A stretch of DNA of 64,000 nucleotides from Macrostomum lignano (GCA_002269645.1 NIVC01003765.1:13782-77781); one strand, 5' to 3'. Counted from the stretch's first letter, positions 15,561-58,699 are shown. Notes: a model not told the origin generated them from the sequence alone. Made by a program: numbers and translations.

Positions 15561-15622
15561 GAGCTGCCCGCAACCCGCAACCAAGCACTCGAATCGCCAC
15601 CACCGATTCCCCTCGCCCGCAG

Positions 15623-18946: not shown

Positions 18947-20734
18947 ATGGCCTCAAGCTATAATGCTGGGCGACCGCTGCCGCTTGTGGTGTCCGTGAAA
19001 GAGCGAACTGAAACTGGACCAAGGTTTGAGCTCGATGCAGAAGTGCTGAAGCAGATGATGGATTTGGACAAACTGAGCAGCGCCAAGGTGGCCGTCATCA
19101 GCGTGACCGGAGCCTTCCGCACAGGCAAGTCCTTCCTGCTCAACTTCTTCCTGAGATACCTCCGAGCTCTCAGTCGAGGTGACACTCGTGACTGGATTCT
19201 ATCTGAGGACCAGCTAGACGACGGATTCCACTGGAGATCCGGGATTGAGAGAGACACCACCGGGATCCTCATCTGGTCCGAGCCGTTCTTCATCCGCAAG
19301 CCCGACGGACAAGAGGTGGCCGTGCTGCTGATGGACACTCAGGGCACATTCGATCACCAGTCGACTCAGCAGGACTGCACAACTATCTTTGCCTTCAGCA
19401 CACTGATGAGCTCAGTGCAGATCCTCAACATTTCTCAGAAGGTCCAGGAGACGGATCTGCAGCACCTGCGGCTGTTTGTCGAGTTCGCTGGGATGGCGAA
19501 GGGCTCGAAGGAGAAGGCGCTGCAACACCTGTGGTTCCTTATCAGAGATTGGCAGAATCCTGATGATTTTGAGTACGGAGTCGCTGACGGAGCGGAGTAT
19601 TTAAAGCAGATCTTAAAGTGCGACGAGCAGATGCCGAGAGAGAACCAGGAACTGAGGCAGGGCATCACGCATCACTTCGAGCAGGCGTCATGCTGTCTGC
19701 TGCCGCATCCTGGAAACGCCGTAGCCTCGTCGAAGTTCCGCGGCGAGCTTAAAAAACTTGATGCAATGTTTGTCGACGAGCTGGAAAAGTTTGTGGCCCT
19801 CATCGCGTCACCTGAGAACATTCCAGTGAAGCAGATCAACGGCAGAGACTTCAAGGGTGTGGACTTCTTCGCTCTGAAGGAGTACTTTGACGCCATTTGC
19901 AGCAGCAGGCTGCCAACTCCGAGAAGCATATTTACGGCCACCGTCGACATGATCAACGTTCTCGCTGCCTCGGAGGCGAAGCAGCTCTTTGAGACGAAGA
20001 TCCAGGAGTTCTTCCGATCGGAGTCGTCGTTGGACATTAGCTCTGCCGAGATGGACAAAGTCCTCGCCGGCATCGAGAAAGAGGCGTTAAAGCTGTTCAA
20101 CTCTCGGTGCATGGAAGTCGCGGATTTTGACGTTGACTGCGTGAAGAGGAGGCTGCAGGAGGAGCTGCGATCGATTGGCAGCAAGCAGGCGCTGCTGCTC
20201 CAAGAGACTGCAAGGAAGAAGGAGGCGGACGCGAGGGCGGACTTGCTGGCGAAGGAGCTCGAGACCCAGCGGGCGGCGTACGCTGAGGGCGTGCAGAAGA
20301 TGCAGCAGTTGGAGGCTGACTTCCAGAAGCGAGTGGAGGAGATTCGGGCGAACAGCGTGAGCAAGGAAGAGATGACTCGACGACTGAAAGTGGAATCGGA
20401 TAGTTACAACATGCGGATCAGCTGTCTGGAAACCGATAAAAGGTTTATGGAAGGTCGTCTCTCTGAATTAAGCCGCAGCCAAAGCGAGAAATCCAACAGT
20501 GCTGTGCAGCGGCTTGAACGCGAGGTCAGCAGTCTTCGGAATGAGAAGGAAAAGCTCGACAGAGAACGAAACGAGGAGCGTAGAAACGCTAACAGAGAAA
20601 TTTCGGAGATCCAAAGAAACTTGGAAGCAGTGATGTTCGCGCTGAAAAATGAAGAGGCCAACAGTAGACAGAGTGCCCAAAAGCTGAACGAGATACAAGA
20701 TAGCTTCAATAAAGGCAACTGTGTGATGATGTGA
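18947..20734 (+). CDS. Atlastin-family GTPase, soluble coiled-coil form with CaaX (paralog 1, 595 aa)
   Basis: G1 GAFRTGKS, G2 ERDTTG, G3 DTQG, G4 IRDW, LLPHPG and helical middle domain as in atlastin; no TM segment; coiled coil; ends GNCVMM*. First ATG at 18947; no introns in the CDS. Confidence 0.92.
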   Translation: MASSYNAGRPLPLVVSVKERTETGPRFELDAEVLKQMMDLDKLSSAKVAVISVTGAFRTGKSFLLNFFLRYLRALSRGDTRDWILSEDQLDDGFHWRSGIERDTTGILIWSEPFFIRKPDGQEVAVLLMDTQGTFDHQSTQQDCTTIFAFSTLMSSVQILNISQKVQETDLQHLRLFVEFAGMAKGSKEKALQHLWFLIRDWQNPDDFEYGVADGAEYLKQILKCDEQMPRENQELRQGITHHFEQASCCLLPHPGNAVASSKFRGELKKLDAMFVDELEKFVALIASPENIPVKQINGRDFKGVDFFALKEYFDAICSSRLPTPRSIFTATVDMINVLAASEAKQLFETKIQEFFRSESSLDISSAEMDKVLAGIEKEALKLFNSRCMEVADFDVDCVKRRLQEELRSIGSKQALLLQETARKKEADARADLLAKELETQRAAYAEGVQKMQQLEADFQKRVEEIRANSVSKEEMTRRLKVESDSYNMRISCLETDKRFMEGRLSELSRSQSEKSNSAVQRLEREVSSLRNEKEKLDRERNEERRNANREISEIQRNLEAVMFALKNEEANSRQSAQKLNEIQDSFNKGNCVMM

Positions 20735-21962
20735 CAGCTGAGGCTGCCCTGACTACAGAAGAATTTTTCCCATTCTGCTGTTGTAATGACAGTTTTTCAT
20801 GAAATTCTGTTATACAAAAGTAGATCAACAAATGGTTTTATCGAATAGCTGTACCAGTATTCGAATTTCCCCCAAGATTTGTGACCCTAAAGAGCATCTA
20901 AAACAGGACCTGTGTACTGATAATTGGATTGCATCATTTTCCTGATGCGTGATAAAATAAAATTGCAAGACAAACGCGTTACGCTTATGTCTATTTTAGC
21001 TTTGATTTGGCTTTGTCACTCGCTTCAGCATTCTCTAACCCAAAGGGAATCAAATAAGGCGGTCGTTTCATAAGCTCGAAGTCCACATCGTCGGAAAGAC
21101 AATTGCTTGTCATTCACAACTAGGGAGATGCTTGACAAGCTTCGAGCTTTTAATATTTTGAGCTCATGGCGATATGAATAACCGAACTTATTGATTTCTG
21201 AATGGGTAAAAGGCTATCTCAATCCCTGCACTTGTATTATCCACTCTTTTCATCTCGTAAGAGTGCCCTAATTGTGAAGGATTTTTAAGGTATAATTTTT
21301 TATGCCTGAGCGCAAGGCTCTTTGCGAACCTCTCCGGCTGCTAAGGTGGTTTTGGTGCCCTCCGGGCCGCTGTAAATGCCTCGGAGGCGGCTACCACTCC
21401 TCACGAGCAGGCTTTGAGCAGGCTTTTACGCAAGAATTCTTAGGGTTTTTCAAGGAATTTGGGGAGCTGATTTCTGCCTGCCATAGCATAAAGCTAATAA
21501 TGAATATTAAGAACATTGAGAATGAAGCACAGTTGCAGTGGCAGAACAGCTCTGTGAAGGCACAGAGCGTTGGTGAGGAAGCGGGGGAAGCCTGATACCG
21601 GAGTAACTTGGCAGACATTCAATATACGAGTAATAAAATAAATTAATTTATCTGAGGTTAAATATATTTGTGTATTTAAAATTTCTGAAGAACACGAGGC
21701 TAAACAGGAAATTTATGTCAGAAACTGACAGAATATTCCAAAATCTTGAGTAGTAGGATAATTCTGGATGGAACCCTGTTTTGATAGTACGCTCGTTCCT
21801 AAAATCAATGATGTAGCTCGTACCGCTTTCAAATAAAAATTTGTTTGAACCAGAATGTCTGCAGGAATTCAAAAAAGGCAAAATATGCGGTGAATAAATA
21901 ACAAATATAGTCAATTATGATTACATCAAACATAATGTAAAGTAAAACACAATTTTGATCAG

Positions 21963-23843
21963 CTATTTCCCATCAGCTTCCTTTCCTTTTGGATCTTCCT
22001 GCTTCTGCGAAGCTGGGGGCTGAATCATGGGAAACGGGATGAAGGTTGGGGTTGAAGCCGCGGCTGCGGCAGAGCAAGAACTGGCGCCTCTTTTCTCGCT
22101 GCCACTGAAAAAATTCGAAATCGTTCCTTTAACAATTTCACCCCCAGCAGCCTGCAAAACTCCGAAAAGAAAATTCTCCCACTTAGCACTGCGTTCGGCT
22201 TCCTGCTCCCGACGTCTGCGCTCTTCTTCCATGTGCTTCTCCCACTGCGCCATCATCTGCTTTGCGTTGGCATCCTGCTGCCTGCGTTCCTCTTGGCTCT
22301 CGCGCACCTGGCGCTGCAGCTCCTCGTTCATCTTTAGCAGGGATTCTATCTTGGCTGCCTGCCGCGAGCTGCGCGCCTCGGACTCCTGCAGGGCCAATTG
22401 GCGTTGCATGGACTCTTTTTCTAGCAGCGACCGCATCTCCTCCTTGGACACGGACGACTCCAAGATTCTTTTCACTTTTTCCTGGAATTCCTGCTCCAGT
22501 TGCTGCATCCTTCTGTTGGTATCAACTTTCTCATCAAGGAGACGTTGAAAGTCTTGCTGCAGCAACTCTCCTTTCTTCTGCTCAGCGATCTTGTCAGACT
22601 TCAGCTGGTTCATTAGTATCAAATCCTGCACCTCCCTCTGTAGATCGTCGTGCAGTTTTCGTCGGCACTTGTCGCAGTCGGTTGAGTCCTTCTGCATGCA
22701 GCGCTTGTCGAATTGTTCGAGCGATTCGTCGGCCAATTTCTGCAGCTGTGGCTCCAATTCGATTGCGTCAACAGCGGATGCGGAGGCTGAAATCGGCCTG
22801 GCCTTGTCAACAAACGTCTGTCTGGCGGATGCGGCAACCACAGCGTTCGTCAATTCGACGGTGGCCGAGAACAGCGACTTTGGCGAAGGTAGCCTGCCGC
22901 TGCGGAAGGCCTCGAAGTAGACTTTGGCGAAGTTCAGCAGCTCGCGCCCAGTGAGTTCTCTTCCATTAACTGCTTTAATGACAAGCTTTTCAGGTGATAG
23001 CACGAGTTCCACAAACTTCTCAACCTCCTCAACAAAGTCTTCATCTAGCTTTTCCAGCTCCCCTCGAACATTCGATCTAGTCGCACACTTCCCAGGGCTG
23101 GGCAGCAGGCAGCAAAACATGCGAAATATTTCCTAATGCCTGCGCGGAGCTCACGGTTTTCAGCCGGCATGTTCTCATCTGACGCCACTACCTTGCGTAG
23201 ATATCTCATACCGCCGGCATGGCCGTTCTCGAACTCATCGGGGTTTTGCCAGTCCCGAATTAGAAACCACAAGTCTTGAAGGACCTTTTCGCTTTCATCC
23301 TTTGCCATCGAGGCGAACTCAACGAACAGTCGGAGGTGCTGCAGATCCGTCTCTTGAATGTTCTGCGAGATGTTGAAGATCTGCACTGAGCTCAGTAGTG
23401 TGCTGAAGACGAAGATTGAGGTGCTATTCCTGCTGAGTCGACTGGTGATCGAATGTACCCTGAGTGTCCATCAGCAGCACGGCCACCGCTTCTCCGTCGG
23501 GCTTGCGGATGAAGAACGGCTCGGACCAGATGAGGATGCCGGTGGTGTCTCTCTCGATCCCGGCTCTCCAGTGGAATTCGTCATCGAGCTGGTCATCAGA
23601 TCGAATCCAGTCTCGAGTGTCTCCTCGACTGAGAGCTCTGAGGTATCTCAGGAAGAAGTTGAGCAGGAAGGACTTGCCTTTACGAAATGCCCCGGCAACA
23701 CTGACTACAGCGACTTTAGACCGAAGGAAGCGCTTAGATGAAAGAATTCGACGCTCGATGCCAGCGTTCAGTTTGAATCTCTCGACGCTCTCAGACTCAC
23801 CGCTTGCTAGCTCTGCCAGGTAGACAACCTCGCCAGTCGTCAT
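21963..23843 (-). pseudogene. Atlastin-family GTPase paralog 2, two frameshifts (pseudogene or assembly error)
   Basis: Three overlapping ORFs (23843-23424, 23386-23045, 23120-21963) reconstruct a full paralog; +1 insertion at ~23425 (gaa t[a]gc acc, creating TAG) and a ~4-nt deletion at ~23120; tail WENFLFGVLQAAGGEIVKGTISNFF, no CaaX. Confidence 0.8.
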
Positions 23844-24723
23844 TGTCTTTGCCTGTTATCTGTTTGTCTGCAACATTTTTTCAGTTTTAATTTGTCGAAC
23901 GTAGAATAGCAACAATGCAAACAGCAAAGATGCACTTTCAAGATCCATAAACTAAAACTTTTGGAGTTTCGAGACGTTACTACGAGCTATATGTATTCAA
24001 AAAGTACAGCTAGACAGAGTTTTCATTTTGAATTACCTAATTTAGATATTAGGTATTAGGGAAGATTTAAGGACAGAAATGAAAATTCATGAGATTTTAA
24101 ATTTCAGTCAGTTGGTATGCGAGTAATACTTAAAATAAATCTGTGGAGTGCAACGTGAGCGTGACGTACAATTTGTATTTTTAAACTCTTGCAAAATTTG
24201 TTTTTGTGCACTCTGCTTAACCGTCGTCATTTCTAAAATAAGATTTAACTTGCACTCGCACTATCTTAGACGCCAAAGCAGATTCGCCACGCCCCACCAG
24301 AGCGTCACACCAGCAGCATTATGCGGGTATTGTACTAAACTGCTTTTAAACTGGTATTGTGTCTGCATGCAGTCTAGTTCGGTTTCGTTTGCTACGAGCG
24401 TACTTGTAGACGGGTAGATATTCACCTCGTTGAGTATGAGCATAGGTCGTGAACATTGCCAAGGAGCTACTGCTATCGTGCTATGCAAAAAAATAAAATG
24501 GAATTTTCCGTTATTTTCCGAAACAACTTGTGCGGAAAGAAGGCCTGCAAGGGACGGATACTATTCTGCTAAGAGCCAAGCTACATTAAAAAGTATTTGT
24601 ACTCGTAACAACGTCGCATGAGTTGAATAGCATATTAATTGCCTTCAAACGCAATTTCTAAAGCTATTATTTGCTAATCACCGCTGTCATTAACTCCCAA
24701 CTCTTTAAGTACAAGCACGCAAA

Positions 24724-26394
24724 ATGGCTTCATCAGTACGGAGCGGACCGATCCACCTCGTCCAGCTAGCTGAAGACACAGAAGATGACTGCATGCGATT
24801 CGAGTTCAACGCTGATATCTTCAAGCAAATGCGAAACGCTCAAAAGCTAGCGACCTGCAAGGTGGTTCTCATTAGCGTGGCCGGAGCCTTCCGCAAGGGC
24901 AAGTCTTTCCTGCTCAACTTCTTCCTGAGATACCTCCGAGCTCTCAGTCGAGGTGACACTCGAGACTGGATTCGATCTGATGACCAGCTCGATGACGGAT
25001 TCCACTGGAGAGCCGGGAGCGAGAGAGACACCACCGGGATCCTCATCTGGTCCGAGCCGTTCTTCATCCGCAAGCCCGACGGACAAGAGGTAGCCGTGCT
25101 GCTGATGGACACTCAGGGCGCATTCGATCACCAGTCGACTCAAAGAGACTGCGCTACGATCTTTGGATTCAGCACACTTCTGAGTTCGGTGCAAATTTTC
25201 AACATCTCGCAGAACATCCAGGAAACAGATCTGCAGCACCTCCGACTGTTTGTCGAGTTTGCTTCAATGGCGAGAGAGTCGAAGGATAAGAAAGTTCTTC
25301 AGCATCTGTGGTTCCTCACCAGAGACTGGCAGAATTCGCACGAGCATGACTATGGTTCTACTGGTGGACAGGAATACCTGGACAAAGTCCTTGCGTGCGA
25401 TAGCCGTAAGCCGAAGGAGAACCAGGAGCTCAGGCTGGGCATCAAGCGGTACTTCGAGCGCGCATCCTGCTGCTTGCTGCCGCATCCAGGAAAGGCAGTT
25501 GCAGCCAAAGACTTCCGAGGTGAAATACATCGACTGGATCCCGAGTTCGTGGATGAAATGGAGAAGTTCATTCCAGTCATTGCCAGTCCACAAGCGCTGG
25601 TAGTAAAAAAGGTGAACGGAACCGAACTTCCTGGAAAAGAGCTATTCAAGTTTTTTGACATATATTTCGAAGCCTTTAAAAACGGGAAAATGCCTACTCC
25701 AAGAAACATTTTCGATGCAACAGTTGAGATGGCAAACATCACCGCTGCTCAGGGGGCGAGGCAGATGTTTGAAGACTCTCTGGATCCGGACCTCCATGAT
25801 GACGAGTTTTTCGACATTCTAGAAGTCCTGAAGCAACAGTCACTGGAATATTTTCTTTCCAACTGCATGCAGCCAGAATCCGCGGCTACCAAGAAGACTC
25901 TGGAGAAGCTGCAAGAGGAGATCCAAGGGCTGCTTGATAACAAGAAGTTCGTCAGGAGGCTGCAGTCGAGGACTTTGAGCGCCGACAGAAAAAACCAACA
26001 ATTGCAGCACGAAATCGGGAGACTGCAGCTACAGAACATGGACGTATTGCAACAGATGGAAAACATGGAGGAGAACTTTAGGAGGACTGAGGAAGAAATC
26101 AGGAGGCAAAGCGTCTCAAAGGATGAAATGGATCGCTTACTGCAAGACTTGTCAATGCAGCACCTTGCTGACAAGATGAAAATTCAGGCTGATAGCGAGA
26201 AGCTTGTGGGAAAAGTGAACCAACTCGCGGAAATGAATTCACAATTGAAAAACCAGCTCTCTGTTCGCCAGCAAGAGGCTCAGCGCTCCTTTGAAAGGCG
26301 AGAACAGTTGAGGCAGAGTGAGGTGGCCGAACTGCAAAGTCGGATTTCCCAGCTCGAGTCGAGAAAACCAAAAAGATCGTGCGTCTTGATGTAG
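24724..26394 (+). CDS. Atlastin-family GTPase, soluble coiled-coil form with polybasic CaaX (paralog 3, 556 aa)
   Basis: GAFRKGKS, SERDTTG, DTQG, TRDW motifs; no TM; ends RKPKRSCVLM*. Confidence 0.92.
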   Translation: MASSVRSGPIHLVQLAEDTEDDCMRFEFNADIFKQMRNAQKLATCKVVLISVAGAFRKGKSFLLNFFLRYLRALSRGDTRDWIRSDDQLDDGFHWRAGSERDTTGILIWSEPFFIRKPDGQEVAVLLMDTQGAFDHQSTQRDCATIFGFSTLLSSVQIFNISQNIQETDLQHLRLFVEFASMARESKDKKVLQHLWFLTRDWQNSHEHDYGSTGGQEYLDKVLACDSRKPKENQELRLGIKRYFERASCCLLPHPGKAVAAKDFRGEIHRLDPEFVDEMEKFIPVIASPQALVVKKVNGTELPGKELFKFFDIYFEAFKNGKMPTPRNIFDATVEMANITAAQGARQMFEDSLDPDLHDDEFFDILEVLKQQSLEYFLSNCMQPESAATKKTLEKLQEEIQGLLDNKKFVRRLQSRTLSADRKNQQLQHEIGRLQLQNMDVLQQMENMEENFRRTEEEIRRQSVSKDEMDRLLQDLSMQHLADKMKIQADSEKLVGKVNQLAEMNSQLKNQLSVRQQEAQRSFERREQLRQSEVAELQSRISQLESRKPKRSCVLM

Positions 26395-34587: not shown

Positions 34588-35428
34588 TTAACTTAGCTTA
34601 GTCACTTTGTTTGCATCGTGCGTTCAGCGTGTACTCAGTGAATCAGAGCGTACTCTGTGCAGTTCAATGTGCATCATTGAGCTAGCCTTGCATCGCTCCT
34701 TAAGTCTCTACCATTTCGTACTCTCTCCACTTACTTTGCCAGTGTTCATCAGTGAAATTCAATATTATTCAAGCTTTTGCTCTCGATTTTTAACTCGTTA
34801 GACTAACTTTAGCGTAACTGCAACGTTAGATAGCTAATTTAACTATCAATAACTCGTTTAAGTAACTTTGGCTATTCTACAAATATATCGCAAGAATTCA
34901 TACTCGTTATTAACAACAATCAGTTCCTGACGTCAGAAGTGGTGGCGAAAAAGTGCTGAAAAATAAACACATACACTTAGCAACATTGAAAAGTCGCCAT
35001 TCTATGCGCCAGTGAGCAATTTCTCTTGGACTTTTTTGAAAACAAATATACGAAAAAACTGATCGGGGTAGCTTTAATCCGTCCAACCCGCGACCTCTCC
35101 CCCACTTTATTCCTCAACTCAAGTCTGCCGCGGTGTAGCTAAGTTGCGGCAAAGATAGAGAGACTTTACCTGCACTCTCAAAAGTGGCGACCACAGACTG
35201 AATCTTCTGTGATGACGACTTTTAAATGTTGCTGAGTATATTACAGTTACGAAGGAGCTGACACATGCTGATTCGACGATTCCAGAAATGTACTTTAATT
35301 TTCCTATTCTAGCTCGTAAGGTGATGAAAAGTATTTCCTATTCGATAACACCACAACTGCAAGATATTTTGTGCGAGCTATGACAGATGAGACTAAGATC
35401 GAAATTCTTATGCAATCTATTTTCAGAA

Positions 35429-37150
35429 ATGCCAGGAAGACCCCTCCAAGTGACGAAGCCGGTCGTTGAAGGCCAGCAGTGGGATGATGAACAGGATCGA
35501 TTTCAATTTAACCGCGACTTCGCTGAACTCATTGACTCACCGGAAAGACTTGCCAAATCGCCTGTCGCCGTCATCAGCGTGGCTGGAGCCTTCCGCAAGG
35601 GCAAGTCTTTTCTGCTCAACTTCTTCCTGAGATACCTCCGAGCTCTCAGTCGAGGTGACACTCGTGACTGGATTCTATCTGAGGACCAGCTAGACGACGG
35701 ATTCCACTGGAGAGCCGGGAGCGAGAGAGACACCACCGGGATCCTCATCTGGTCCGAGCCGTTCTTCATCCGCAAGCCCGACGGACAAGAGGTGGCCGTG
35801 CTGCTCATGGACACTCAGGGCACATTTGATCACCAATCGACCCAGCAGGACTGCACCACCATCTTTGCCTTCAGCACACTGATGAGCTCAGTTCAGATCT
35901 TCAACATCTCGCAGAACATCCAGGAGACGGATCTGCAGCACCTTCGACTATTTATTGAGTTCGCTTCGATGGCGAAGAACTCTGCAAAGAAAGTTCTCCA
36001 ACATCTGTGGTTCCTCATCAGAGACTGGCAGAATCCAGACGAGTATGATTACGGAGCTAATGGCGGAGAAGACTACCTTAAAAACGTTCTTGCGTGTGAT
36101 GAAAAGAAGCCTCCAGAGAACCAGGCGCTGAGACAAGGCATCAAGCGGCAGTTCGAGGCGGCGTCCAGCTTCCTGCTGCCGTATCCTGGAAAAGCAGTCA
36201 CGCGAGCGGATTTCAAGGGTCAAGTTGACAGGCTCGATAGCGACTTTGTCGAGCACCTGGATTGCTTTGTCCGCCGTATTTTGGCGCCCGAAAATCTTGT
36301 GGTCAAGAAGCTGAACGGCAAGGTGCTCACTGGTCGAGAGTTTTTCTCACTTATTGAAGTTTACTTCGATGCCTTCCGCCTTGGCAAGCTGCCGACTCCG
36401 AAGAGCATCTTCACCGCCACCGTCGAGATGGCCAATCAATCTGCTTCGCGGGACGCAGTGAAATTCTTCGAAGATTCGATGGGCTCACTTTCGGGTCCGA
36501 CAGCCATCAGCGACCAGGAGCTGAGCGACCTACTCAGTACGATGTTTGAGCAGGCGATGCAGCACTTCGATGACAACTGCATGGAGAGAGGATCGAAAGA
36601 CACTGCTCAAACCAGGATGAAGCTCGAAGCTGAGCTCCGAGGACTGTTCCAGCAGCAGCAGATGCTGAACCAGCTGAAGTCGGACAAGATCGAGGCCGAG
36701 ACGAAGAGCCGCATGCTGATGGACCACATAAAGCGCATGCAGGACGAGAGCCTGGCAGCTGCACAACGAATGTGCGAGATGGAGAAGGAGTTCGCTGACA
36801 AAGTTGCTGAGATTCAACGCTCGGCGATTACAAGAGAGCAAATGGAGGAGATGCTGGTTAAGCACTCGACTGCGCAAAAGGAATTGGAAAAGCAGAATGA
36901 AAAGATGATGAAGCGAACCGTGGAGATGGCGGAGAAAAACCGGAAGTTGATGAGTAAGCTGAAGCAGAATAAAGAGGAGGCGATGCAGCAGCAGCAGGAG
37001 ATGATGGAGGAGTTTATGCGGCAAATGAAGGTTGCACAGGAAAAATACAGGAAGGCGGCAGAGGATTCTTCCAACTTTTTCACAAAGTATGTTTCTCCCA
37101 TTTTGTCCGCCGCCGTTCCTACAGCTTTGCGTCTTTGGTTTCAAAGTTAG
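35429..37150 (+). CDS. Atlastin-family GTPase, coiled-coil form with amphipathic/hydrophobic C-terminus (paralog 4, ~573 aa)
   Basis: GAFRKGKS, SERDTTG, DTQG, IRDW; ends SNFFTKYVSPILSAAVPTALRLWFQS*; ATG 35429 lies 2 nt after acceptor-like ttttcag (ORF track starts at 35387). Confidence 0.9.
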   Translation: MPGRPLQVTKPVVEGQQWDDEQDRFQFNRDFAELIDSPERLAKSPVAVISVAGAFRKGKSFLLNFFLRYLRALSRGDTRDWILSEDQLDDGFHWRAGSERDTTGILIWSEPFFIRKPDGQEVAVLLMDTQGTFDHQSTQQDCTTIFAFSTLMSSVQIFNISQNIQETDLQHLRLFIEFASMAKNSAKKVLQHLWFLIRDWQNPDEYDYGANGGEDYLKNVLACDEKKPPENQALRQGIKRQFEAASSFLLPYPGKAVTRADFKGQVDRLDSDFVEHLDCFVRRILAPENLVVKKLNGKVLTGREFFSLIEVYFDAFRLGKLPTPKSIFTATVEMANQSASRDAVKFFEDSMGSLSGPTAISDQELSDLLSTMFEQAMQHFDDNCMERGSKDTAQTRMKLEAELRGLFQQQQMLNQLKSDKIEAETKSRMLMDHIKRMQDESLAAAQRMCEMEKEFADKVAEIQRSAITREQMEEMLVKHSTAQKELEKQNEKMMKRTVEMAEKNRKLMSKLKQNKEEAMQQQQEMMEEFMRQMKVAQEKYRKAAEDSSNFFTKYVSPILSAAVPTALRLWFQS

Positions 37151-50000: not shown

Positions 50001-51861
50001 CAGAACAGACCAACAGACAGCCACAGCACCATTAAAGGACAATACAGAACAGACCAACAGACAGCCACAGCACCATTAAAGGACAATACAGAACAGACCA
50101 ACAGACAGCCACAGCACCATTAAAGGACAATACAGAACAGACCAACAGACAGCCACAGCACCATTAAAGGACAATACAGAACAGACCAACAGACAGCCAC
50201 AGCACCATTAAAGGACAATACAGAACAGACCAACAGACAGCCACAGCACCATTAAAGGACAATACAGAACAGACCAACAGACAGCCACAGCACCATTAAA
50301 GGACAATACAGAACAGACCAACAGACAGCCACAGCACCATTAAAGGACAATACAGAACAGACCAACAGACAGCCACAGCACCATTAAAGGACAATACAGA
50401 ACAGACCAACAGACAGCCACAGCACCATTAAAGGACAATACAGAACAGACCAACAGACAGCCACAGCACCATTAAAGGACAATACAGAACAGACCAACAG
50501 ACAGCCACAGCACCATTAAAGGACAATACAGAACAGACCAACAGACAGCCACAGCACCATTAAAGGACAATACAGAACAGACCAACAGACAGCCACAGCA
50601 CCATTAAAGGACAATACAGAACAGACCAACAGACAGCCACAGCACCATTAAAGGACAATACAGAACAGACCAACAGACAGCCACAGCACCATTAAAGGAC
50701 AATACAGAACAGACCAACAGACAGCCACAGCACCATTAAAGGACAATACAGAACAGACCAACAGACAGCCACAGCACCATTAAAGGACAATACAGAACAG
50801 ACCAACAGACAGCCACAGCACCATTAAAGGACAATACAGAACAGACCAACAGACAGCCACAGCACCATTAAAGGACAATACAGAACAGACCAACAGACAG
50901 CCACAGCACCATTAAAGGACAATACAGAACAGACCAACAGACAGCCACAGCACCATTAAAGGACAATACAGAACAGACCAACAGACAGCCACAGCACCAT
51001 TAAAGGACAATACAGAACAGACCAACAGACAGCCACAGCACCATTAAAGGACAATACAGAACAGACCAACAGACAGCCACAGCACCATTAAAGGACAATA
51101 CAGAACAGACCAACAGACAGCCACAGCACCATTAAAGGACAATACAGAACAGACCAACAGACAGCCACAGCACCATTAAAGGACAATACAGAACAGACCA
51201 ACAGACAGCCACAGCACCATTAAAGGACAATACAGAACAGACCAACAGACAGCCACAGCACCATTAAAGGACAATACAGAACAGACCAACAGACAGCCAC
51301 AGCACCATTAAAGGACAATACAGAACAGACCAACAGACAGCCACAGCACCATTAAAGGACAATACAGAACAGACCAACAGACAGCCACAGCACCATTAAA
51401 GGACAATACAGAACAGACCAACAGACAGCCACAGCACCATTAAAGGACAATACAGACAGACCAACAGACAGCCACAGCACCATTAAAGGACAATACAGAC
51501 AGACCAACAGACAGCCACAGCACCATTAAAGGACAATACAGACAGACCAACAGACAGCCACAGCACCATTAAAGGACAATACAGACAGACCAACAGACAG
51601 CCACAGCACCATTAAAGGACAATACAGACAGACCAACAGACAGCCACAGCACCATTAAAGGACAATACAGACAGACCAACAGACAGCCACAGCACCATTA
51701 AAGGACAATACAGGACAGACCAACAGACAGCCACAGCACCATTAAAGGACAATACAGGACAGACCAACAGACAGCCACAGCACCATTAAAGGACAATACA
51801 GGACAGACCAGACAGCCACAACACCATTAATGTACAATACAGGACAGACAGACCACAGCAC
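38071..51861. repeat. Satellite array, 44-bp unit (acagaacagaccaacagacagccacagcaccattaaaggacaat), ~313 copies, 13.8 kb
   Basis: The printed 60-nt lines repeat every 660 bp (15 units); only a few variants seen (A>T at 39799, 39843, 39887, 39975, 40107; 43-bp units ~51455-51710; A>G units near the end). Confidence 0.99.
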
Positions 51862-53245: not shown

Positions 53246-53358
53246 ATTCTCAGCAGAAAAAAGACAGCCACACAGAACCCAAGTCTCTGAAAAAGTTTGG
53301 AGCCTGAACTATTTTGGGTAAATAAGAACCACAAAAATTCACCTTATTCTGCCGATGA

Positions 53359-55020
53359 TCACTGGATTGAACATCCACCGCCTCGTGGCGCTGCTGCCGC
53401 CTCGTGGCGGATACTCTCACACCTCATTCTTTCACGCTCTTCCAGCCTCGCATTTTCGATCTTAAGGTTTATAAGCTCAATCTGTGCAGCGGAACTTTGA
53501 GCACTCATGGTTTGCATCTGACTTATCTGCCTCCTTAGCTCGTTATTCTTCTCCTCCATCTTTATTCGAGCAACGTCTTGTTTGAGCGCTTCTTCCTGCA
53601 GCTTCCTCTCCATCTCCTCTTTGGAAATGCTCTCCGACTTGATCTGCTCGATTGTTGTCTTGAATGTGGCTTCCATCTCCTGCATCTGCTTCTGCCGGTC
53701 TTGAGTCTGCTGCTTTAGGCCCTCCATCTCGCCCTTCAGCAAGTCCGACTTCTTCTCGGCCGTTAGCTTCTCCGATCTGAGCTGCCTGTTCAGGACAGCC
53801 TTGTCTTTCAGCTCGGTTAGGTCATCTTGGAGCTTCTTTTTCGCTTTCCGGACTTCAGACGAGTCGCTCTCCATGCACTTGGAGTTGAAAGCATCCAGCG
53901 CCTCCTTTGAAGCTTCATCAACTGCCGCTTGAAACTCTTCGTCACTCTTCGCTGGATCCAAAAAGCTCTTGACTTTGTCTTCGAACAGTCTTTTTGAGTT
54001 TGAAGCAGCGGTCATGTTGACCATCTCGACAGTGGCGGAGAAAACACTCGACGGAGTTGGCATCCTGCCGCTGCTGAAAGCCTCAAAGTAAACCTCCATG
54101 AAGTCGATGAGCTCGCTGCCAGAGAGCTCATTGCCGTTGACTTTCTTAACTGTGATGTTCTCTGGAGCGGCGATCTTCTCAACAAAGCTCTCGATTTCTT
54201 CAACAAACTCCGTCTCTAGTCTCTGGACATCGCCCGTGAATTTAGAGTCTCTCACTGCTTTGCCTGGATGAGGCAGCAGATAGCAGGAAGCCTTCTCGAA
54301 GTGCTTCTTGATTCCCTCTCGTAGCTCTTTGTTTTCTTGTGGCCTGTCAGCACTACAGTCGAGAACGGTTGACAAGTACTCGCTTCCACCTTCTTCTCCA
54401 TACTGATGCTCATCTGGGAATTGCCAGTCTCTGATCAGAAACCACAGATGCTGCAGAGCCTTTCCCTCTGAGCTCTTTGCCAAAGCCGCGAACTCAACGA
54501 ACAGGCGCAGATTCTGCAGATCCGCCTCGGAGATGTTCTGCGAAAGGTTGAAGATCTGCACGGAGCTCAGCAGCGTGCTGAACGCAAAGATGGTCGTGCA
54601 GTCCTGCTGAGTCGTCTGGTGATCGAACGTGCCCTGAGTGTCCATCAGCAGCACGGCCACCTCTTGTCCGTCGGGCTTGCGGATGAAGAACGGCTGCGAC
54701 CAGAGAAGAATTCCAGTCGTATCTCGCTTGGATCCGGACTTCCAGTGGAATCCGCTTCTATGATGGTCATCCGAGTTAATCCAGTCTTCTGTGTTTCCAC
54801 TTACCAGGGCGGTCAGGTAGCGCAGAAAGAAGTTGAGCAAGAAGGACTTGCCTTTTCGGAAGGCTCCGGCCACGCAGATGATGGCGATCTTCGCTTTCAA
54901 CATTCGGTCAAGGTCTTTGACCTGTGCTGAGATCTTAGGATTCAAACTAAATCCGGTATTTTTCTCATCAGGAATGATGAGTTGTATTGCGGTAGCAGTG
55001 GTTTCAGTTGGGCTCGCCAT
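53359..55020 (-). CDS. Atlastin-family GTPase, soluble coiled-coil form with CaaX (paralog 5, 553 aa)
   Basis: GAFRKGKS, SKRDTTG, DTQG, IRDW; no TM; ends PRGGGCSIQ*; first ATG at 55020. Confidence 0.92.
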   Translation of the reverse strand: MASPTETTATAIQLIIPDEKNTGFSLNPKISAQVKDLDRMLKAKIAIICVAGAFRKGKSFLLNFFLRYLTALVSGNTEDWINSDDHHRSGFHWKSGSKRDTTGILLWSQPFFIRKPDGQEVAVLLMDTQGTFDHQTTQQDCTTIFAFSTLLSSVQIFNLSQNISEADLQNLRLFVEFAALAKSSEGKALQHLWFLIRDWQFPDEHQYGEEGGSEYLSTVLDCSADRPQENKELREGIKKHFEKASCYLLPHPGKAVRDSKFTGDVQRLETEFVEEIESFVEKIAAPENITVKKVNGNELSGSELIDFMEVYFEAFSSGRMPTPSSVFSATVEMVNMTAASNSKRLFEDKVKSFLDPAKSDEEFQAAVDEASKEALDAFNSKCMESDSSEVRKAKKKLQDDLTELKDKAVLNRQLRSEKLTAEKKSDLLKGEMEGLKQQTQDRQKQMQEMEATFKTTIEQIKSESISKEEMERKLQEEALKQDVARIKMEEKNNELRRQISQMQTMSAQSSAAQIELINLKIENARLEERERMRCESIRHEAAAAPRGGGCSIQ

Positions 55021-55279
55021 CGCAAATATTAAAAAGCTTTTCTTCAAACAACTTTAGCTCAGGCGTGACTCTTGGTACACTGGACTAACAACTTGTTTCC
55101 GTCACAGGCTACTTTATACCTTGAAGAGTTTCTGCTAATAGATTTGGTCTGGCTGCAACTTTAAACTCAAGTGTTCGAGCGCACTGCGTTCCTTGTTTTA
55201 TAGCTCTTAGTGAACTTCTGAAAAGCGAAGTTTCCTTTTTCTACTGTACTGTTTACGAAGTAGAATCGAAGTTTCCTTA

Positions 55280-55765
55280 CCGCAAGTACACTGGTTAAAA
55301 GGGAAGTTCCCTCTCCGCAAGTACACTGATTAAAAGGGAAGTTCTCTCTCCGCAAGTACACTGGATAAAAAGGAAGTTCCATCTCCGCAAGTACACTGGT
55401 TAAAAGGGAAGTTCTCTCTCCGCAAGTACACTGGTTAAAAAGGAAGTTCCATCTCCGCAAGTACACTGGTTAAAAGGGAAGTTCTCTCTCCGCAAGTACA
55501 CTGGTTAAAAGGGAAGTTCCTCTCCGCAAGTACACTGGTTAAAAGTGAGGTTCCCTCTCCGCAAGTACACTGGTTAAAAGGGAAGTTCTCTCTCCGCAAG
55601 TACACTGGTTAAAAGTGAAGTTACATTTCTGCAAGTGCATTGGTTAAAAGTGAAGTTCTCTCTCCGCAAGTACACTGGTTAAAGGGAAGTTCCATCTCTA
55701 CAAGTCCACTGATCAGAAGTGAAGCTCGATCTCTGCAAGTGCACTGGTTAAAAGTGAAGTTCCTT
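55280..55765. repeat. 35-bp minisatellite upstream of paralog 5 (ccgcaagtacactggttaaaagggaagttctctct)n
   Basis: Period 35 (55281, 55316 ...), about 14 copies. Confidence 0.9.
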
Positions 55766-56893
55766 TTCTGCAACTCAGATATCATATGAAATAGACGTCG
55801 TATCACGTGACCCTGCTTACTAAAGTTTTGGACGAAAGGAAATTTAAATTGATCCCCTTCCTCACCCTAACAATTTTGATAGATATGTGCTAAGATTTAC
55901 TCAGCTGCCGGGGCTCCGGGAATCCGGATACAGCGATGTGGCGTTGACGCCCATTCCGCTAACCCCTGGCAACAGCGGGCGGCTAGTGCTGCGGTGTTGT
56001 GCAGGTAGATCCGGTTGCGCCAGTGTTCATAGGTCACTGAAAGGCAAATGGGGGCTAAGGCAAGAGACTGCTGGGCCGTAACCCCAAACCCAACAGCAAG
56101 CCAAAAGATAGCGACCAGGAGTGGCTTAAGCTCTTACTGGAACGACCGCTAGCAACTGAGAAACTCTTCGGCTAAGATCCTGGATTGGAATAACCAGAGG
56201 CCAAACCAAAGGTCCATCAGCATGGTACTACACTGGGCCCTTGAGAGAGACAGAGAGGCTGTCTCCGGGGCCTGCAGACAAGCCGCGCACCCAAATTCAG
56301 AGGCTGAGACATGGAACAGAGGAATTTGCCAAAAACGCCTCCCTGCATGCATGCACCAAAGCCCAGCACCGCCAGCAACAGATATTACCGTAAAATTCCA
56401 ACAACTGTTTTATAATTGGCGTTGTGAGAGCATTCAGTGCATTCATTATTTGCATTAATGAGAACCGAAGTTCCTTTTCTGCTAAAGTGCACTGTTTAGA
56501 AGCCAAGCAGTTCTTCTGCATCAAATCTTCTGCATCAGCCAGTTTTTTTCCCAAGGCTGGAATTCCTGACAATGTTTCGCTTCGCCGGAACCGAGAAAGT
56601 CCGGCAAACTGTTTTGTTGCACGGAAAGAAGAATGTACTCAAAAAAATTGAGAAGAAAACTTCTAAAACAAGAATGTAACACGAAGGCCTGACCACAACC
56701 CTCCTGCGACTAAACTTTTATTTAAGGCAAAATAAGAAACAGTTTCTCGTAATAGGCTTATATTTAGATAAGCGAAAGTCCTTGATTTTTGTCTCTGTAA
56801 GCATAAGGCTACAAGTTAATGTTTTAAAATAGTCAACTTACTAACGCACTAGTTAAAAATCGTAAGAACGTTTGTGCAGAATAACTCTCAGCC

Positions 56894-58699
56894 TCACTGC
56901 TGTTTGCATCTCTTGTCGAGCTTGCCGACTTCAGAATCTTCTGTTATTTGGTTTTCTTGAGCATCTGGTCTCTCTCTGTCTTGTGCGATCCCAGATGCCT
57001 GGGCTCGATGCCTTCCATCCGTTCTTTCGTAGTGCTCGTACTCAGCGATGTAGCCTTCTTTTATTTCCTCTGTGCTCAACTTCAAATCATCATGGTGTCT
57101 TCTCTCCTCTTCTGTCTTCCTTCTCGATGGCTCCAGTCTCGATTCCATGGTCCTACGTTGCTCCTCCACCATCGCTTCACTGGCTTGCTTTTGTAGCTCG
57201 GCAAGTTTCGATGTCAATTGCAGGTTTTCCTGCTCCATTTTCCACTGGTTGATCTGGTGCTGCATGCTCTCCTTCTGCAACTTTTTCTCGAATTCGTCTC
57301 TTGATGCCATACCCTGCGAAAGCTCTTTCATGCTCTGCTGGAACCTCTGCTCCATCTCAACCATTCGTCTCGCAACCTCCTCGTTGTCCTTGTGCAGACT
57401 CTCGATGTCATTGGCGAGCATCTGGTTTCTCTCCTCCTCGGCAATCTTTTCGGATCGCAGCTGGTTCATGAGTCGGTGATGTTGCGACTGCTGCTGAAGG
57501 TCTTCTTCAAGACCCGCCCGGCAGTCAGCCGTGGCTTCAGAGCTCTTCTGCATGCAGTTCTTGTCAAAGTAGGCCAGCGCTTCCAGAGTCGCTGCACCGA
57601 GTAGGCTCTCGAACTCTTCGTCAGTGACCGCGGCTGCTGGATCGACTCGTGAGGCCACTTTCTGTTCGAACAGCTCTTTGGATGCCTTCGACACGGCCAG
57701 GTTCGTCAAGTCCACGGTGGCCGACAGGATGGTGCGCGATGACGGAAGCCTTCCGCTGCGAAAAGCTTCGTAATAGACTTCGGCGAAGGTTATCAGCTCG
57801 GAGCCCGTCAGCGCTCTCCCGTTGACGGCCTTGGAAGCGAGGCACTCAGGTGACAATATTCTAGCGGAAAGTTTATCGATCTCCGCCAAAAACTCCGGGC
57901 TGATTTTGTCCAGCTCTCCGTGAAAATCCTTTCTGGTAACAGCGAATCCGGGGTGCGGCAGAAGGCAACAAGACGTGTTTTCAAAAAACTTTCGGATGCC
58001 CTGCCGAAGCTCCAAGTTTTCCATTGGCTTTTTCGGATCGCACTCCAGGACCTTGTCAAGGTACTGGCGTCCGCCTTCTACACCGAACTCGTACTCATCA
58101 GGGTACTGCCAGTCTCTGATGAGGAACCACAGATGCTGGAGCACAGAGTCCTGCGAGTCCGAAGCGATCGATGCGAACTCGACAAATAGTCGGAGGTGCT
58201 GCAGATCTGTCTCCTGGATGTTCTGCGAGATGTTGAAGATCTGAACTGAGCTCAGCAGCGTGCTGAAGGCAAAGATTGATGTGCAGTCCTGCTGAGTGGA
58301 CTGGTGATCGAATGTGCCCTGAGTGTCCATCAGTAGCACGGCCACCTCTTGTCCGTCGGGCTTGCGGATGAAGAACGGCTCGGACCAGATGAGGATCCCG
58401 GTGGTGTCTCTCTCGCTCCCGGATCTCCAGTGGAATCCGTCTGAGAGCCTCTCGTCGGACCAAAGCCACTGCGAAGCATCGCCGCAACTCGCGGCCTTCA
58501 AGAAGCGAAGAAAAAAGTTGAGCAGGAATGACTTGCCCTTGCGAAAGGCTCCGGCAACGCTGATCACAGCAACCTTGCTCTTCTGGAGCCGGTCAGCGGA
58601 CTGCATCTCCGCCCAGATATTTGGGTTCAGTCGAAACCTCTCTGCCCCGGATTCGGACTCGACCAGAGTTGTGAGTTGCACTGGATGTGGGACCTCCAT
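56894..58699 (-). CDS. Atlastin-family GTPase, coiled-coil form ending CKQQ (paralog 6, 601 aa)
   Basis: GAFRKGKS, SERDTTG, DTQG, IRDW; no TM; ends KRCKQQ*. The last ~45 aa lose coiled-coil character, so a late frameshift cannot be excluded. Confidence 0.88.
   Translation of the reverse strand: MEVPHPVQLTTLVESESGAERFRLNPNIWAEMQSADRLQKSKVAVISVAGAFRKGKSFLLNFFLRFLKAASCGDASQWLWSDERLSDGFHWRSGSERDTTGILIWSEPFFIRKPDGQEVAVLLMDTQGTFDHQSTQQDCTSIFAFSTLLSSVQIFNISQNIQETDLQHLRLFVEFASIASDSQDSVLQHLWFLIRDWQYPDEYEFGVEGGRQYLDKVLECDPKKPMENLELRQGIRKFFENTSCCLLPHPGFAVTRKDFHGELDKISPEFLAEIDKLSARILSPECLASKAVNGRALTGSELITFAEVYYEAFRSGRLPSSRTILSATVDLTNLAVSKASKELFEQKVASRVDPAAAVTDEEFESLLGAATLEALAYFDKNCMQKSSEATADCRAGLEEDLQQQSQHHRLMNQLRSEKIAEEERNQMLANDIESLHKDNEEVARRMVEMEQRFQQSMKELSQGMASRDEFEKKLQKESMQHQINQWKMEQENLQLTSKLAELQKQASEAMVEEQRRTMESRLEPSRRKTEEERRHHDDLKLSTEEIKEGYIAEYEHYERTDGRHRAQASGIAQDRERPDAQENQITEDSEVGKLDKRCKQQ

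What the first reader, a model, noticed from the sequence alone, without database searches (positions are those of the whole stretch)
19128..58445. GTPase core homogenised at nucleotide level while tails diverge: patchwork gene conversion
Seen: about 300 bp spanning G1-G3 (e.g. 19141-19480 vs 35617-35945, 24910-25245, 23335-23670 and, in part, 58195-58445) is nearly identical including synonymous sites, whereas N-termini and coiled coils barely align. Variants are shuffled: ILSEDQ in paralogs 1 and 4, IRSDDQ in 2 and 3; RSGIE (1), RAGIE (2), RAGSE (3, 4), RSGSE (6). Inference: ongoing interlocus conversion, also between inverted copies. This could keep GTPase dimer interfaces cross-compatible so that paralogs with different tails can hetero-oligomerise.
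Basis: partly seen in the sequence, partly recalled or inferred. Interest (0 to 1): 0.7.

Follow-up and report, generated by a model that had tools for sequence, protein, structure and literature searches.

The report
Gene conversion homogenises flatworm GTPase cores
Six neighbouring atlastin-like GTPase genes of the flatworm Macrostomum lignano share a stretch of about 250-400 bp that is nearly identical even at silent sites while the rest of each gene has diverged to saturation, which is best explained by repeated gene conversion between the copies, a known process seen here in a new gene family.

Summary
The window is the last 64 kb of M. lignano contig NIVC01003765.1. It holds six intronless atlastin-like genes, g1-g6; g2 has a disrupted frame.

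**Silent-site pattern.** Silent-site difference (pS) is 0.6-1.0 over most of each gene. It falls in steps:
- codons 76-109: 0-0.22 among g1-g4 only;
- codons 110-123: 0-0.19, now including g6;
- codons 124-157: 0.09-0.39 among all six (Fisher P 1e-4 to 1e-11).

**Evidence for conversion.**
- Boundaries differ between gene pairs.
- Informative sites inside the core conflict (PHI-type P=0.003).
- The three subgenome copies differ at silent sites as often inside the core as outside, so the core is not specially constrained.
- g1 differs from its homeolog mainly in the core (13 of 22 substitutions), and 11 of those 13 take another paralog's state.

Together these support recurrent interlocus gene conversion, including between inverted copies, with at least one event after the recent genome duplication.

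**Limits.**
- The assembly was polished with short reads, so the single-site patchwork needs read-level confirmation.
- The hetero-oligomer idea is untested and not needed, because these residues are already conserved in human and fly atlastins.

**Precedent.** MxA/MxB show localised conversion of the P-loop region. This is a new member of a known kind.

The parts
18947..20734 (+). g1, an atlastin-like GTPase gene. The ORF opens at GTG 18938 and the probable start is ATG 18947. The protein ends in CVMM (CaaX).
   Evidence: ORF. Pfam GBP domain, E=8.9e-63. The annotated start MASSY... appears in P0004 and P0276.
19103..19510 (+). g1 homogenised core, from the P-loop to the end of segment R4. 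The fully homogenised part is 19136-19381.
   Evidence: Coordinates, alignment. pS is 0.00 against g4 in codons 76-109.
21963..23843 (-). g2, an inverted copy with a disrupted frame: a +1 insertion after ...STQQ and a 4-bp deletion before MFCCLLP. It is a probable pseudogene, or only recently disabled.
   Evidence: Three reading frames; indels visible. The +1 insertion is present on contigs B and D and the 4-bp deletion on contig B. Homeolog pN/pS is 0.32.
23291..23699 (-). g2 homogenised core.
   Evidence: pS is 0.09-0.24 against the other paralogs in codons 76-157.
24724..26394 (+). g3, an atlastin-like GTPase gene of 556 aa ending in CVLM (CaaX).
   Evidence: AlphaFold2 model with mean pLDDT 84.1. 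Best Foldseek matches are the human atlastin-1 cytosolic domain, TM-score normalised by target (TMt) about 0.83.
24877..25284 (+). g3 homogenised core.
35387..37150 (+). g4, an atlastin-like GTPase gene. The annotated start is ATG 35429. It has a mildly hydrophobic C-terminus and no CaaX box.
   Evidence: P0274 and P0275 are 573 aa. Hydropathy scan.
35579..35986 (+). g4 homogenised core.
   Evidence: It is identical to g1 over 102 bp, alignment columns 228-329.
53359..55020 (-). g5, an inverted atlastin-like GTPase gene of 553 aa ending in CSIQ (CaaX). It is identical on three subgenome contigs.
54466..54696 (-). g5 shared part of the core (segments R3 and R4 only). Upstream of 54696 g5 is saturated against all the others.
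   Evidence: pS is 0.82-0.91 in codons 110-123 and 0.09-0.27 in codons 124-157. The sharp switch at alignment column 372 is visible.
56894..58699 (-). g6, an inverted atlastin-like GTPase gene of 601 aa ending in CKQQ.
58151..58423 (-). g6 shared part of the core (segments R2-R4). Upstream of about 58423 it is saturated against all the others.
   Evidence: pS is 0.75-0.76 in codons 76-109 against g1-g4, and 0.00-0.10 against the same four in codons 110-123. Run test against g3 and g4 gives P<=0.0005.
17520..17625 (+). An isolated, degenerate fragment of about 100 bp of a g1-type core (carries the RSGIE codons). It has a 2-bp and a 24-bp internal deletion and lies 1.3 kb upstream of g1.
   Evidence: tblastn and blastn hits. 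Alignment to the cores at 77-83% overall, with blocks at 86-92%. No other gene homology around it.

Best explanation
The six genes are old tandem duplicates of an atlastin-derived GTPase; their silent sites are saturated against one another. Short tracts of non-reciprocal recombination (interlocus gene conversion) have repeatedly copied the segment encoding the P-loop, switch I and switch II (G1-G3) from one copy to another, in both direct and inverted orientation.

Tracts start and end at different places in different pairs. That produces a nested pattern: g1-g4 share about 270 bp, g6 joins for about 145 bp, and g5 for about 100 bp. Inside the core this leaves a patchwork of variants, and on the 3' side similarity decays gradually.

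Inferred steps. The process is seeded and kept going because this is the most strongly conserved protein segment of the atlastin fold, so it retains enough nucleotide identity for heteroduplex formation. It is confined there because the flanks are too diverged, and perhaps because conversions that reach the specificity-bearing tails are selected against. Conversion of this segment is most simply neutral ('tolerated'), since it swaps functionally equivalent sequence.

Shown here: the silent-site pattern, the pair-specific boundaries, the mosaic, and the normal short-term silent-site divergence in the core. Inferred: the direction and number of events, why the tracts are confined, and any benefit.
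For: (1) pS is 0-0.39 in the core and 0.6-1.0 elsewhere, with Fisher P of 2.5e-4 to 6.9e-11. Codons 200-220 have low pN but saturated pS, so protein constraint does not explain the drop.

(2) Boundaries are pair-specific and sharp. In alignment columns 328-372, g5 alone differs from g1-g4 and g6 at 16 sites. In the next 100 columns it has only 2 private differences. g6 switches from saturated to near-identical at about column 312.

(3) A run test on polymorphic sites gives P<=0.0005 for six pairs, including three pairs on opposite strands.

(4) There is conflicting phylogenetic signal inside the core. Sites 215 and 224 group {g1,g2}{g3,g4}. Five sites between 281 and 311 group {g1,g4}{g2,g3}. 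Site 337 groups {g1,g2}{g3,g4,g6}. The PHI-type test gives P=0.003 in the core and 0.058 outside it.

(5) There is no sign of extra synonymous constraint in the core. Between homeologous copies, pS is 0.0126 in the core and 0.0134 outside without g1, or 0.020 and 0.0139 with g1.

(6) g1 compared with its copy on contig NIVC01000952.1 shows 13 of 22 substitutions within 345 bp of core (binomial P=4e-5). Eleven of the 13 fall on sites where g2, g3 or g4 differ from g1 and take the paralog's state (P=1e-7).

(7) There is no Rfam hit, no excess RNA folding (z=+0.89) and no conserved antisense ORF.

(8) The frame-disrupted g2 still carries the homogenised core.

(9) Paralog-specific core states recur on independent contigs and in gene models with UniProt A0A1I8 accessions, which I take from memory to come from the older ML2 assembly.
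Against: - No cross-species comparison was possible, so the classic test was not run. That test asks whether paralogs within a species are more alike in the core than orthologs between species.
- The assembly was polished with Pilon using Illumina and RNA-seq short reads, and the end of contig D is of poor quality, with many 1-bp deletions in g2D. Single-site patchwork and the g1A/g1D differences could therefore be partly mis-polishing.
- Some discordances lie 4 bp apart (g1D matches g2 at position 373 but not at 377). Simple tracts do not explain these; they need patchy repair or later mutation.
- The GC3 signal of biased conversion is mixed: raised in codons 110-200 but not in 76-109.
- Apart from g1, no multi-site tract distinguishes subgenome copies.
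- Counts in the homeolog test are small (7 synonymous differences in the core).
Confidence: 0.8

Rival explanations
1. Selected homogenisation. Conversion occurs, but it is maintained by selection because a common G-domain surface lets paralogs with different tails form GTP-dependent hetero-dimers or mixed coats, as GBPs do.
For: The homogenised segment encodes the P-loop (with the atlastin arginine), switch I and switch II. From established knowledge of atlastin and GBP structures, these form the nucleotide-dependent G-G interface. In codons 76-109, conversion makes g1-g4 identical at the protein level where g5 and g6 differ (pN 0.24-0.27 against 0-0.04). Tails are highly diverged and several end in CaaX boxes, an arrangement that recalls GBPs.
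Against: Most of the segment is conserved as far as fly and human atlastins, so purifying selection alone keeps the interface alike. Silent-site identity brings no protein-level benefit. The G4 and guanine-cap region lies outside the homogenised block. The frame-disrupted g2 is homogenised too. There are no interaction data.
Confidence: 0.12
2. Nucleotide-level purifying selection. The core holds a functional RNA or DNA element (a structure, a small-RNA target, a splicing or translational signal, or an overlapping antisense gene) that constrains silent sites in every copy.
For: All six copies share about 86-100 bp with only singleton differences. Long antisense ORFs overlap the core in g1, g2, g3 and g6.
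Against: The conserved block has different limits in different paralogs. Homeolog pS in the core equals that outside; under a 5-fold constraint about 1.5 silent differences would be expected and 7 were seen. There is no Rfam match and no excess folding. The antisense frame is interrupted in g5, g4 and g3 and is not conserved outside the core. The disrupted g2 and a non-coding relic also carry the sequence.
Confidence: 0.05
3. Assembly or polishing artefact. The near-identity was created by collapse of long reads or by Pilon correcting paralogs toward each other with mis-mapped short reads.
For: Mlig_3_7 was polished with Pilon using Bowtie2-mapped Illumina reads and STAR-mapped RNA-seq reads. 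The genome has three near-identical subgenomes. g5 is 100% identical on three contigs whose flanks differ by 1-3%. Annotation already jumps between cores: P0004 joins the g1 head to the g3 tail.
Against: Short reads cannot map across paralogs that differ by 40-60%, so polishing cannot create a 250-400 bp block out of saturated sequence. Each paralog keeps private core substitutions that recur on independent contigs (g2 on three contigs, g4 on two). The older-assembly gene models carry the same states. Block boundaries fall at codon-level positions that differ by gene. The artefact could still account for some single-site 'shuffling' and for part of the g1A/g1D difference.
Confidence: 0.03

Closest known systems
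Localised gene conversion between the MxA and MxB antiviral GTPase paralogs of mammals (Mitchell et al. 2015, PMC4687636)
   Same: These are dynamin-superfamily GTPase paralogs lying next to each other. Recurrent conversion is largely restricted to the segment encoding the BSE and the start of the G domain with the P-loop, while the specificity-determining parts stay distinct. The authors discuss the same two readings, 'tolerated conversion' and selected exchange.
   Different: The present case has six copies rather than two, the genes are intronless, and some copies are inverted. The tracts are much shorter (about 100-300 bp) and nested. The family is atlastin-derived and its function is unknown. 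Evidence for Mx comes from many species; here it comes from one polyploid genome.
Atlastins (ER-fusion GTPases ATL1-3, Drosophila atlastin)
   Same: Best sequence match in the PDB: E=8e-89 to fly atlastin and about 1e-84 to human ATL1, over the G domain plus the three-helix middle domain. The predicted g3 structure superposes on the ATL1 cytosolic domain with TMt of about 0.83. The P-loop GAFRKGKS and the RD motif are present.
   Different: There is no transmembrane hairpin and no atlastin C-terminal amphipathic helix. Instead there is a hairpin of two helices of about 75-80 residues each, ending in CaaX in g1 and g3 (canonical), in g5 (fairly canonical) and in g6 (non-canonical). The family is tandemly expanded and its tails diverge fast.
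Guanylate-binding proteins (GBP1, GBP2, GBP5)
   Same: All have the Pfam GBP N-terminal domain, a long helical C-terminal part and a C-terminal CaaX box. They are clustered paralogs. GBP_C matches weakly in g4, g5 and g6. Full-length Foldseek alignments to GBP1 and GBP2 span about 570-620 columns.
   Different: Sequence is far closer to atlastin: E of about 1e-12 to GBPs against 1e-89 to atlastin. TM-scores to GBPs are only about 0.45-0.49. No link to immunity has been shown.
Other atlastin-like proteins with long helical tails (P0176 from an unidentified Logan transcript; Bactrocera oleae 'atlastin isoform X2', P0139)
   Same: An atlastin-type head followed by a long coiled-coil tail. P0176 ends in CTIL (CaaX).
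   Different: P0176 is only 31% identical to g3. P0139 ends in a transmembrane tail anchor. Nothing is known about conversion in these genes.

Membership tests
Interlocus gene conversion (concerted evolution of a gene segment) | Regional collapse of synonymous divergence between paralogs relative to the rest of the gene | tested here: met
   pS is 0-0.39 in codons 76-157 and 0.6-1.0 elsewhere, with Fisher P of 2.5e-4 to 6.9e-11.
Interlocus gene conversion (concerted evolution of a gene segment) | Pair-specific tract boundaries and conflicting phylogenetic signal (mosaic) within the region | tested here: met
   Nested boundaries for g1-g4, g6 and g5. Run test P<=0.0005 for six pairs. Incompatible partitions and PHI-type P=0.003.
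Interlocus gene conversion (concerted evolution of a gene segment) | The low divergence is not due to constraint on silent sites | tested here: met
   Homeolog pS is 0.0126 in the core and 0.0134 outside. No Rfam hit, fold z=+0.89, antisense ORF not conserved. Counts are small.
Interlocus gene conversion (concerted evolution of a gene segment) | In the converted segment, paralogs within a species are more alike than orthologs between species | not testable with these tools
   No relatives outside M. lignano were found closer than ordinary atlastins. The M. cliftonense and M. hystrix assemblies exist (PMC10468722) but could not be searched.
Interlocus gene conversion (concerted evolution of a gene segment) | Sequence verified at read level (no collapse or mis-polishing) | not testable with these tools
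   Indirect support only: the same core states on independent contigs and in older-assembly gene models. The assembly was polished with Pilon and short reads.
Interlocus gene conversion (concerted evolution of a gene segment) | GC-biased signature in converted tracts | tested here: inconclusive
   GC3 is 0.63-0.93 in codons 110-200 of the converted copies, against 0.52-0.76 in codons 201 to the end and 0.50 in unconverted g5 at codons 110-123. There is no rise in codons 76-109.
Atlastin | GBP/atlastin-type G domain with the GAFRKGKS P-loop and the RD (G4) motif | tested here: met
   Pfam PF02263 with E of 1e-63 to 1e-66. Alignment to fly and human atlastin.
Atlastin | Three-helix-bundle middle domain following the G domain | tested here: met
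   AlphaFold2 model helices 304-380. Foldseek against the ATL1 cytosolic domain gives TMt 0.83 at 36% identity.
Atlastin | Two transmembrane helices and a C-terminal amphipathic helix anchoring the protein in the ER membrane | tested here: not met
   No 19-residue window in any tail exceeds Kyte-Doolittle 1.06. The model shows two long helices (387-461 and 466-546) followed by CaaX.
Guanylate-binding protein (GBP) | GBP C-terminal helical domain (PF02841) | tested here: inconclusive
   25.5 bits in g4 against a cut-off of 24.3; 22.7 and 20.1 bits in g5 and g6, below the cut-off; no match in g1 or g3.
Guanylate-binding protein (GBP) | Closer in sequence to GBPs than to other dynamin-superfamily branches | tested here: not met
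   E of 3e-12 or weaker to GBP1, GBP2 and GBP5, against 8e-89 to atlastin.
Guanylate-binding protein (GBP) | C-terminal CaaX prenylation box (present in GBP1, GBP2 and GBP5) | tested here: met
   g1 CVMM, g3 CVLM, g5 CSIQ, g6 CKQQ (non-canonical); absent in g4 and g2. Prenylation itself was not tested.

The most novel reading that the evidence does not exclude
This cluster could be a flatworm counterpart of the vertebrate GBPs that arose independently from atlastin. On this reading the proteins are prenylated, coiled-coil-tailed GTPases whose diversified tails target different membranes or invaders. Gene conversion would be selectively retained to keep one shared G-domain interface, so that the paralogs co-assemble into mixed GTP-dependent coats.
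Probability: 0.1. Interest if true: 0.7.

Novelty: new member of a known kind. Interest (0 to 1): 0.4.

Why it matters
Conversion restricted to one domain of tandem paralogs is a known way for gene families to keep a shared catalytic part while their specificity parts diverge.

This case is unusually clean. The genes have no introns. The flanks are saturated at silent sites. The tract limits are nested at base-pair resolution. Three subgenome copies serve as an internal clock. The host, M. lignano, can be made transgenic.

It has practical consequences for that genome. The shared core already causes chimeric and fused gene models, and it will mislead short-read mapping, expression estimates, RNAi or CRISPR target design, and phylogenies of the family.

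It also points to an uncharacterised atlastin-derived family with CaaX-ended tails.

Tried and rejected
- **RNA element.** The Rfam scan of the whole window gave 0 hits. Folding the g1 core gave z=+0.89. Rejected.
- **Overlapping antisense gene.** The antisense frame is open in g1, g2 and g6. It has stops in g5, g4 and g3 and is not conserved outside the core. Rejected.
- **P0004 as a real g1/g3 recombinant haplotype.** It is a gene model spanning 7.4 kb that joins the g1 head to the g3 tail across the identical core. This is an annotation artefact, not a deletion haplotype.
- **Cross-species test.** Three searches found no closer relatives outside M. lignano: a full-length search, a tail-profile word-index search (which returned only g5 and even missed known relatives, so it was insensitive for coiled coils), and an exhaustive HMMER search with the tail profile. 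The test could not be run.
- **Multi-site conversion tracts between subgenome copies of g2, g3, g4, g5 and g6.** None were found, only scattered single sites.
- **A decayed seventh paralog around the upstream relic.** No further homology was found.
- **GC-biased conversion.** The signal was mixed.
- **Literature.** No paper was found on M. lignano atlastin-like genes or on atlastin-like proteins with CaaX boxes.


Full report
**Where the window comes from**

The window is eukaryotic. The best protein relatives of the GTPase ORFs are Macrostomum lignano proteins.

A look-up of one of them places g1 at position 10001 of a locus cut from NIVC01003765.1 (assembly GCA_002269645.1, Mlig_3_7). By coordinates, the window is therefore the last 64,000 bp of that 77,781-bp contig.

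Upstream of the cluster lies a large cadherin gene. Between g4 and g5 lies a 13.8-kb satellite with a 44-bp unit.

**The genes**

tblastn with one paralog finds six full copies and one fragment:

| Copy | Window coordinates | Strand | Note |
|---|---|---|---|
| g1 | 18947-20734 | + | |
| g2 | 23843-21963 | - | read in three frames |
| g3 | 24724-26394 | + | |
| g4 | 35387-37150 | + | |
| g5 | 55020-53359 | - | |
| g6 | 58699-56894 | - | |
| fragment | about 17520-17625 | + | about 100 bp |

- All are single ORFs with the Pfam GBP N-terminal domain (E of 1e-63 to 1e-66).
- In the PDB they match atlastins far better than GBPs: 8e-89 against about 1e-12.
- An AlphaFold2 model of g3 (mean pLDDT 84.1) shows the G domain, the three-helix middle domain and then two helices of about 75-80 residues.
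- Foldseek superposes that model on the human atlastin-1 cytosolic domain at TMt of about 0.83.
- No tail contains a transmembrane-grade hydrophobic stretch.
- g1, g3 and g5 end in CVMM, CVLM and CSIQ; g6 ends in CKQQ.

These are therefore atlastin-derived proteins that lack the defining membrane anchor of atlastins and carry a GBP-like tail plan.

An exhaustive HMMER search with a profile of the six tails found only M. lignano gene models at E<1e-30. A 31%-identical protein of unknown origin, P0176, has the same plan and ends in CTIL.

**Checking the observation**

Windows outside the core are 25-65% identical.

On a codon alignment, pS behaves as follows:

| Region (alignment codons) | Copies compared | pS |
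|---|---|---|
| N-termini, rest of G domain, middle domain, tails | all pairs | 0.6-1.0 |
| R1, 76-109 | among g1-g4 | 0-0.22 |
| R1, 76-109 | g5 or g6 against any other | 0.60-0.76 |
| R2, 110-123 | among g1-g4 and g6 | 0-0.19 |
| R2, 110-123 | g5 against the others | 0.82-0.91 |
| R3, 124-157 | all six | 0.09-0.39 |
| R4, 158-200 | all six | 0.31-0.76 |

- Fisher tests of R3 against the sequence outside the core are significant for all 15 pairs.
- Codons 200-220 have low pN but saturated pS, so protein conservation alone does not lower pS.

**Conversion versus its alternatives**

*a. Boundaries are sharp and differ by paralog.*
- In alignment columns 328-372, g5 alone differs from g1-g4 and g6 at 16 sites. 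In the next 100 columns it has only 2 private differences.
- g6 switches from saturated to near-identical at about column 312.
- An element under constraint would be expected to have the same limits in every copy.

*b. Long runs of agreement.* A Sawyer-type permutation test on polymorphic sites finds runs of concordance with P<=0.0005 for g1-g3, g1-g4, g2-g3, g3-g4, g3-g6 and g4-g6. Three of these pairs are in inverted orientation.

*c. Conflicting groupings inside the core.*
- Sites 215 and 224 group {g1,g2}{g3,g4}.
- Five sites between 281 and 311 group {g1,g4}{g2,g3}.
- Site 337 groups {g1,g2}{g3,g4,g6}.
- A PHI-type test gives P=0.003 in the core.

*d. The three subgenomes give an internal clock.*
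- M. lignano DV1 has three homeologous subgenomes, differing by about 2.2% genome-wide and 1.1% in coding sequence (PMC10733133).
- The cluster is present on NIVC01000951.1 (g1 tail to g6), on NIVC01003048.1 (g6, g5) and at the end of NIVC01000952.1 (cadherin, g1, part of g2).
- Between these copies, synonymous divergence in the core (0.0126 without g1) equals that outside (0.0134).
- Silent changes therefore accumulate in the core at the ordinary rate over short times, yet are erased among paralogs over long times.
- A homogenising process predicts this pattern; constraint does not.

*e. Other nucleotide-level explanations find no support.* There is no Rfam family, no excess folding and no conserved antisense ORF.

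*f. The disrupted copy is homogenised too.* g2 has a +1 insertion and a 4-bp deletion. The insertion is also on contigs B and D, and the deletion on contig B. g2 still carries the homogenised core.

**Is conversion ongoing?**

- g1 in the window and g1 on NIVC01000952.1 differ by 22 substitutions.
- Thirteen of them lie within 345 bp of core (P=4e-5).
- Eleven of those 13 fall on sites where g2, g3 or g4 differ from g1 and take the paralog's state (P=1e-7).
- At the protein level, ILSEDQ...RSGIE becomes IRSEDQ...RAGSE.
- This implies at least one conversion after the subgenomes separated.
- For g2-g6, no multi-site tract separates the subgenome copies.

**Caveats**

- Mlig_3_7 was polished with Pilon using Illumina and RNA-seq short reads (PMC5730564).
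- The end of contig NIVC01000952.1 shows many 1-bp deletions.
- Polishing cannot create a block of several hundred base pairs out of sequences that differ by about half.
- Paralog-specific core substitutions recur on independent contigs and in gene models with UniProt A0A1I8 accessions. That those models come from the older ML2 assembly is from my memory, not a tool result.
- Single-site shuffling and part of the g1 difference could still be artefacts.
- Some discordances 4 bp apart do not fit simple tracts.
- The GC3 signal is mixed.

The homogenised segment is the part of the protein most conserved with fly and human atlastins.

The inference is that slow protein evolution preserved enough nucleotide identity to seed heteroduplexes. 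Conversion then maintained that identity, and the diverged flanks stop the tracts.

Purifying selection already keeps these residues alike. The G4 and guanine-cap region lies outside the block. The disrupted g2 is homogenised as well.

Only in R1 does conversion make g1-g4 alike at the protein level where g5 and g6 differ. That stretch is where a functional effect could be looked for.

**Comparison with what is known**

The closest precedent is the recurrent, localised conversion of the BSE and P-loop-encoding segment between MxA and MxB (PMC4687636). The authors of that paper discuss the same 'tolerated' and 'selected' alternatives.

The present case is a new member of that kind: more copies, nested short tracts, inverted partners, and an uncharacterised atlastin-derived family.

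**Verdict**

- Gene conversion is the best explanation (about 0.8).
- The functional rationale is unsupported.
- Novelty is modest.
- The main practical value is as a clean example, and as a warning for annotation and read mapping in this genome.

Noticed in passing
window 38071-51849; L004 11853-13581: A 44-bp satellite between g4 and g5 has 313 copies (13.8 kb, 99% matches) in the window. On the homeologous contig NIVC01000951.1 it has only 39 copies (1.7 kb). The third contig (NIVC01003048.1) ends inside the array.
   Followed up: partly
window 18947-26394 (L001 10001-17448): GenBank gene BOX15_Mlig034242g1 (P0004) is a chimeric model. It joins the g1 head to the g3 tail by a 5.8-kb 'intron' placed inside the identical core. 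UniProt models P0001, P0002, P0121, P0276 and P0277 fuse two or three neighbouring paralogs. The shared core evidently misleads spliced alignment and annotation.
   Followed up: yes
window 17520-17625 (+): An isolated, degenerate fragment of about 100 bp of a g1-type core (RSGIE codons, with a 2-bp and a 24-bp internal deletion) lies 1.3 kb upstream of g1 with no other gene homology around it. It could be a relic of a lost copy or a short templated insertion.
   Followed up: partly
window 21963-23843 (-): g2 carries two frameshifts (+1 and -4, net -3). The +1 insertion is on all three subgenome contigs and the 4-bp deletion is also on contig B. Yet the out-of-frame stretch of about 100 codons has no stop in its own frame, and homeolog pN/pS is 0.32 rather than about 1. 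Disabling therefore looks recent or incomplete.
   Followed up: partly
window 53359-55020; L004 8660-10321; L005 10001-11662: g5 is 100% identical over 1662 bp on all three subgenome contigs, and g4 differs at only 2 sites, while the surrounding DNA differs by 1-3%. This could reflect strong selection, exchange between homeologs, or homogenisation by RNA-seq-based Pilon polishing.
   Followed up: partly
L004 4964-6765; L005 6307-8111; L006 9872-14473: The homeologous copies of g6 (contigs B and C), g1 and g2 (contig D) contain single-base indels that would break the frame. These are either real decay of redundant copies or residual long-read errors near contig ends.
   Followed up: no
window 1-15800: Upstream is a large cadherin (FAT-like) gene. 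Its exons are about 65-69% G+C and are interrupted by many minisatellites with periods of 9-90 bp, in sharp compositional contrast to the roughly 45% G+C GTPase cluster.
   Followed up: partly
window 18958-19338 (-), 23358-23741 (+), 24847-25239 (-), 58323-58730 (+): Antisense ORFs of 126-135 aa overlap the core and N-terminal region of g1, g2, g3 and g6. The frame is interrupted in g5, g4 and g3 and is not conserved outside the core, so they look incidental.
   Followed up: yes
window 33101-33741 and 55268-55763: Further tandem arrays lie in the intergenic DNA of the cluster: a 151-bp unit with 4.2 copies, and a 35-bp unit (also scored as a 174-bp unit) with 14 copies between g5 and g6.
   Followed up: no
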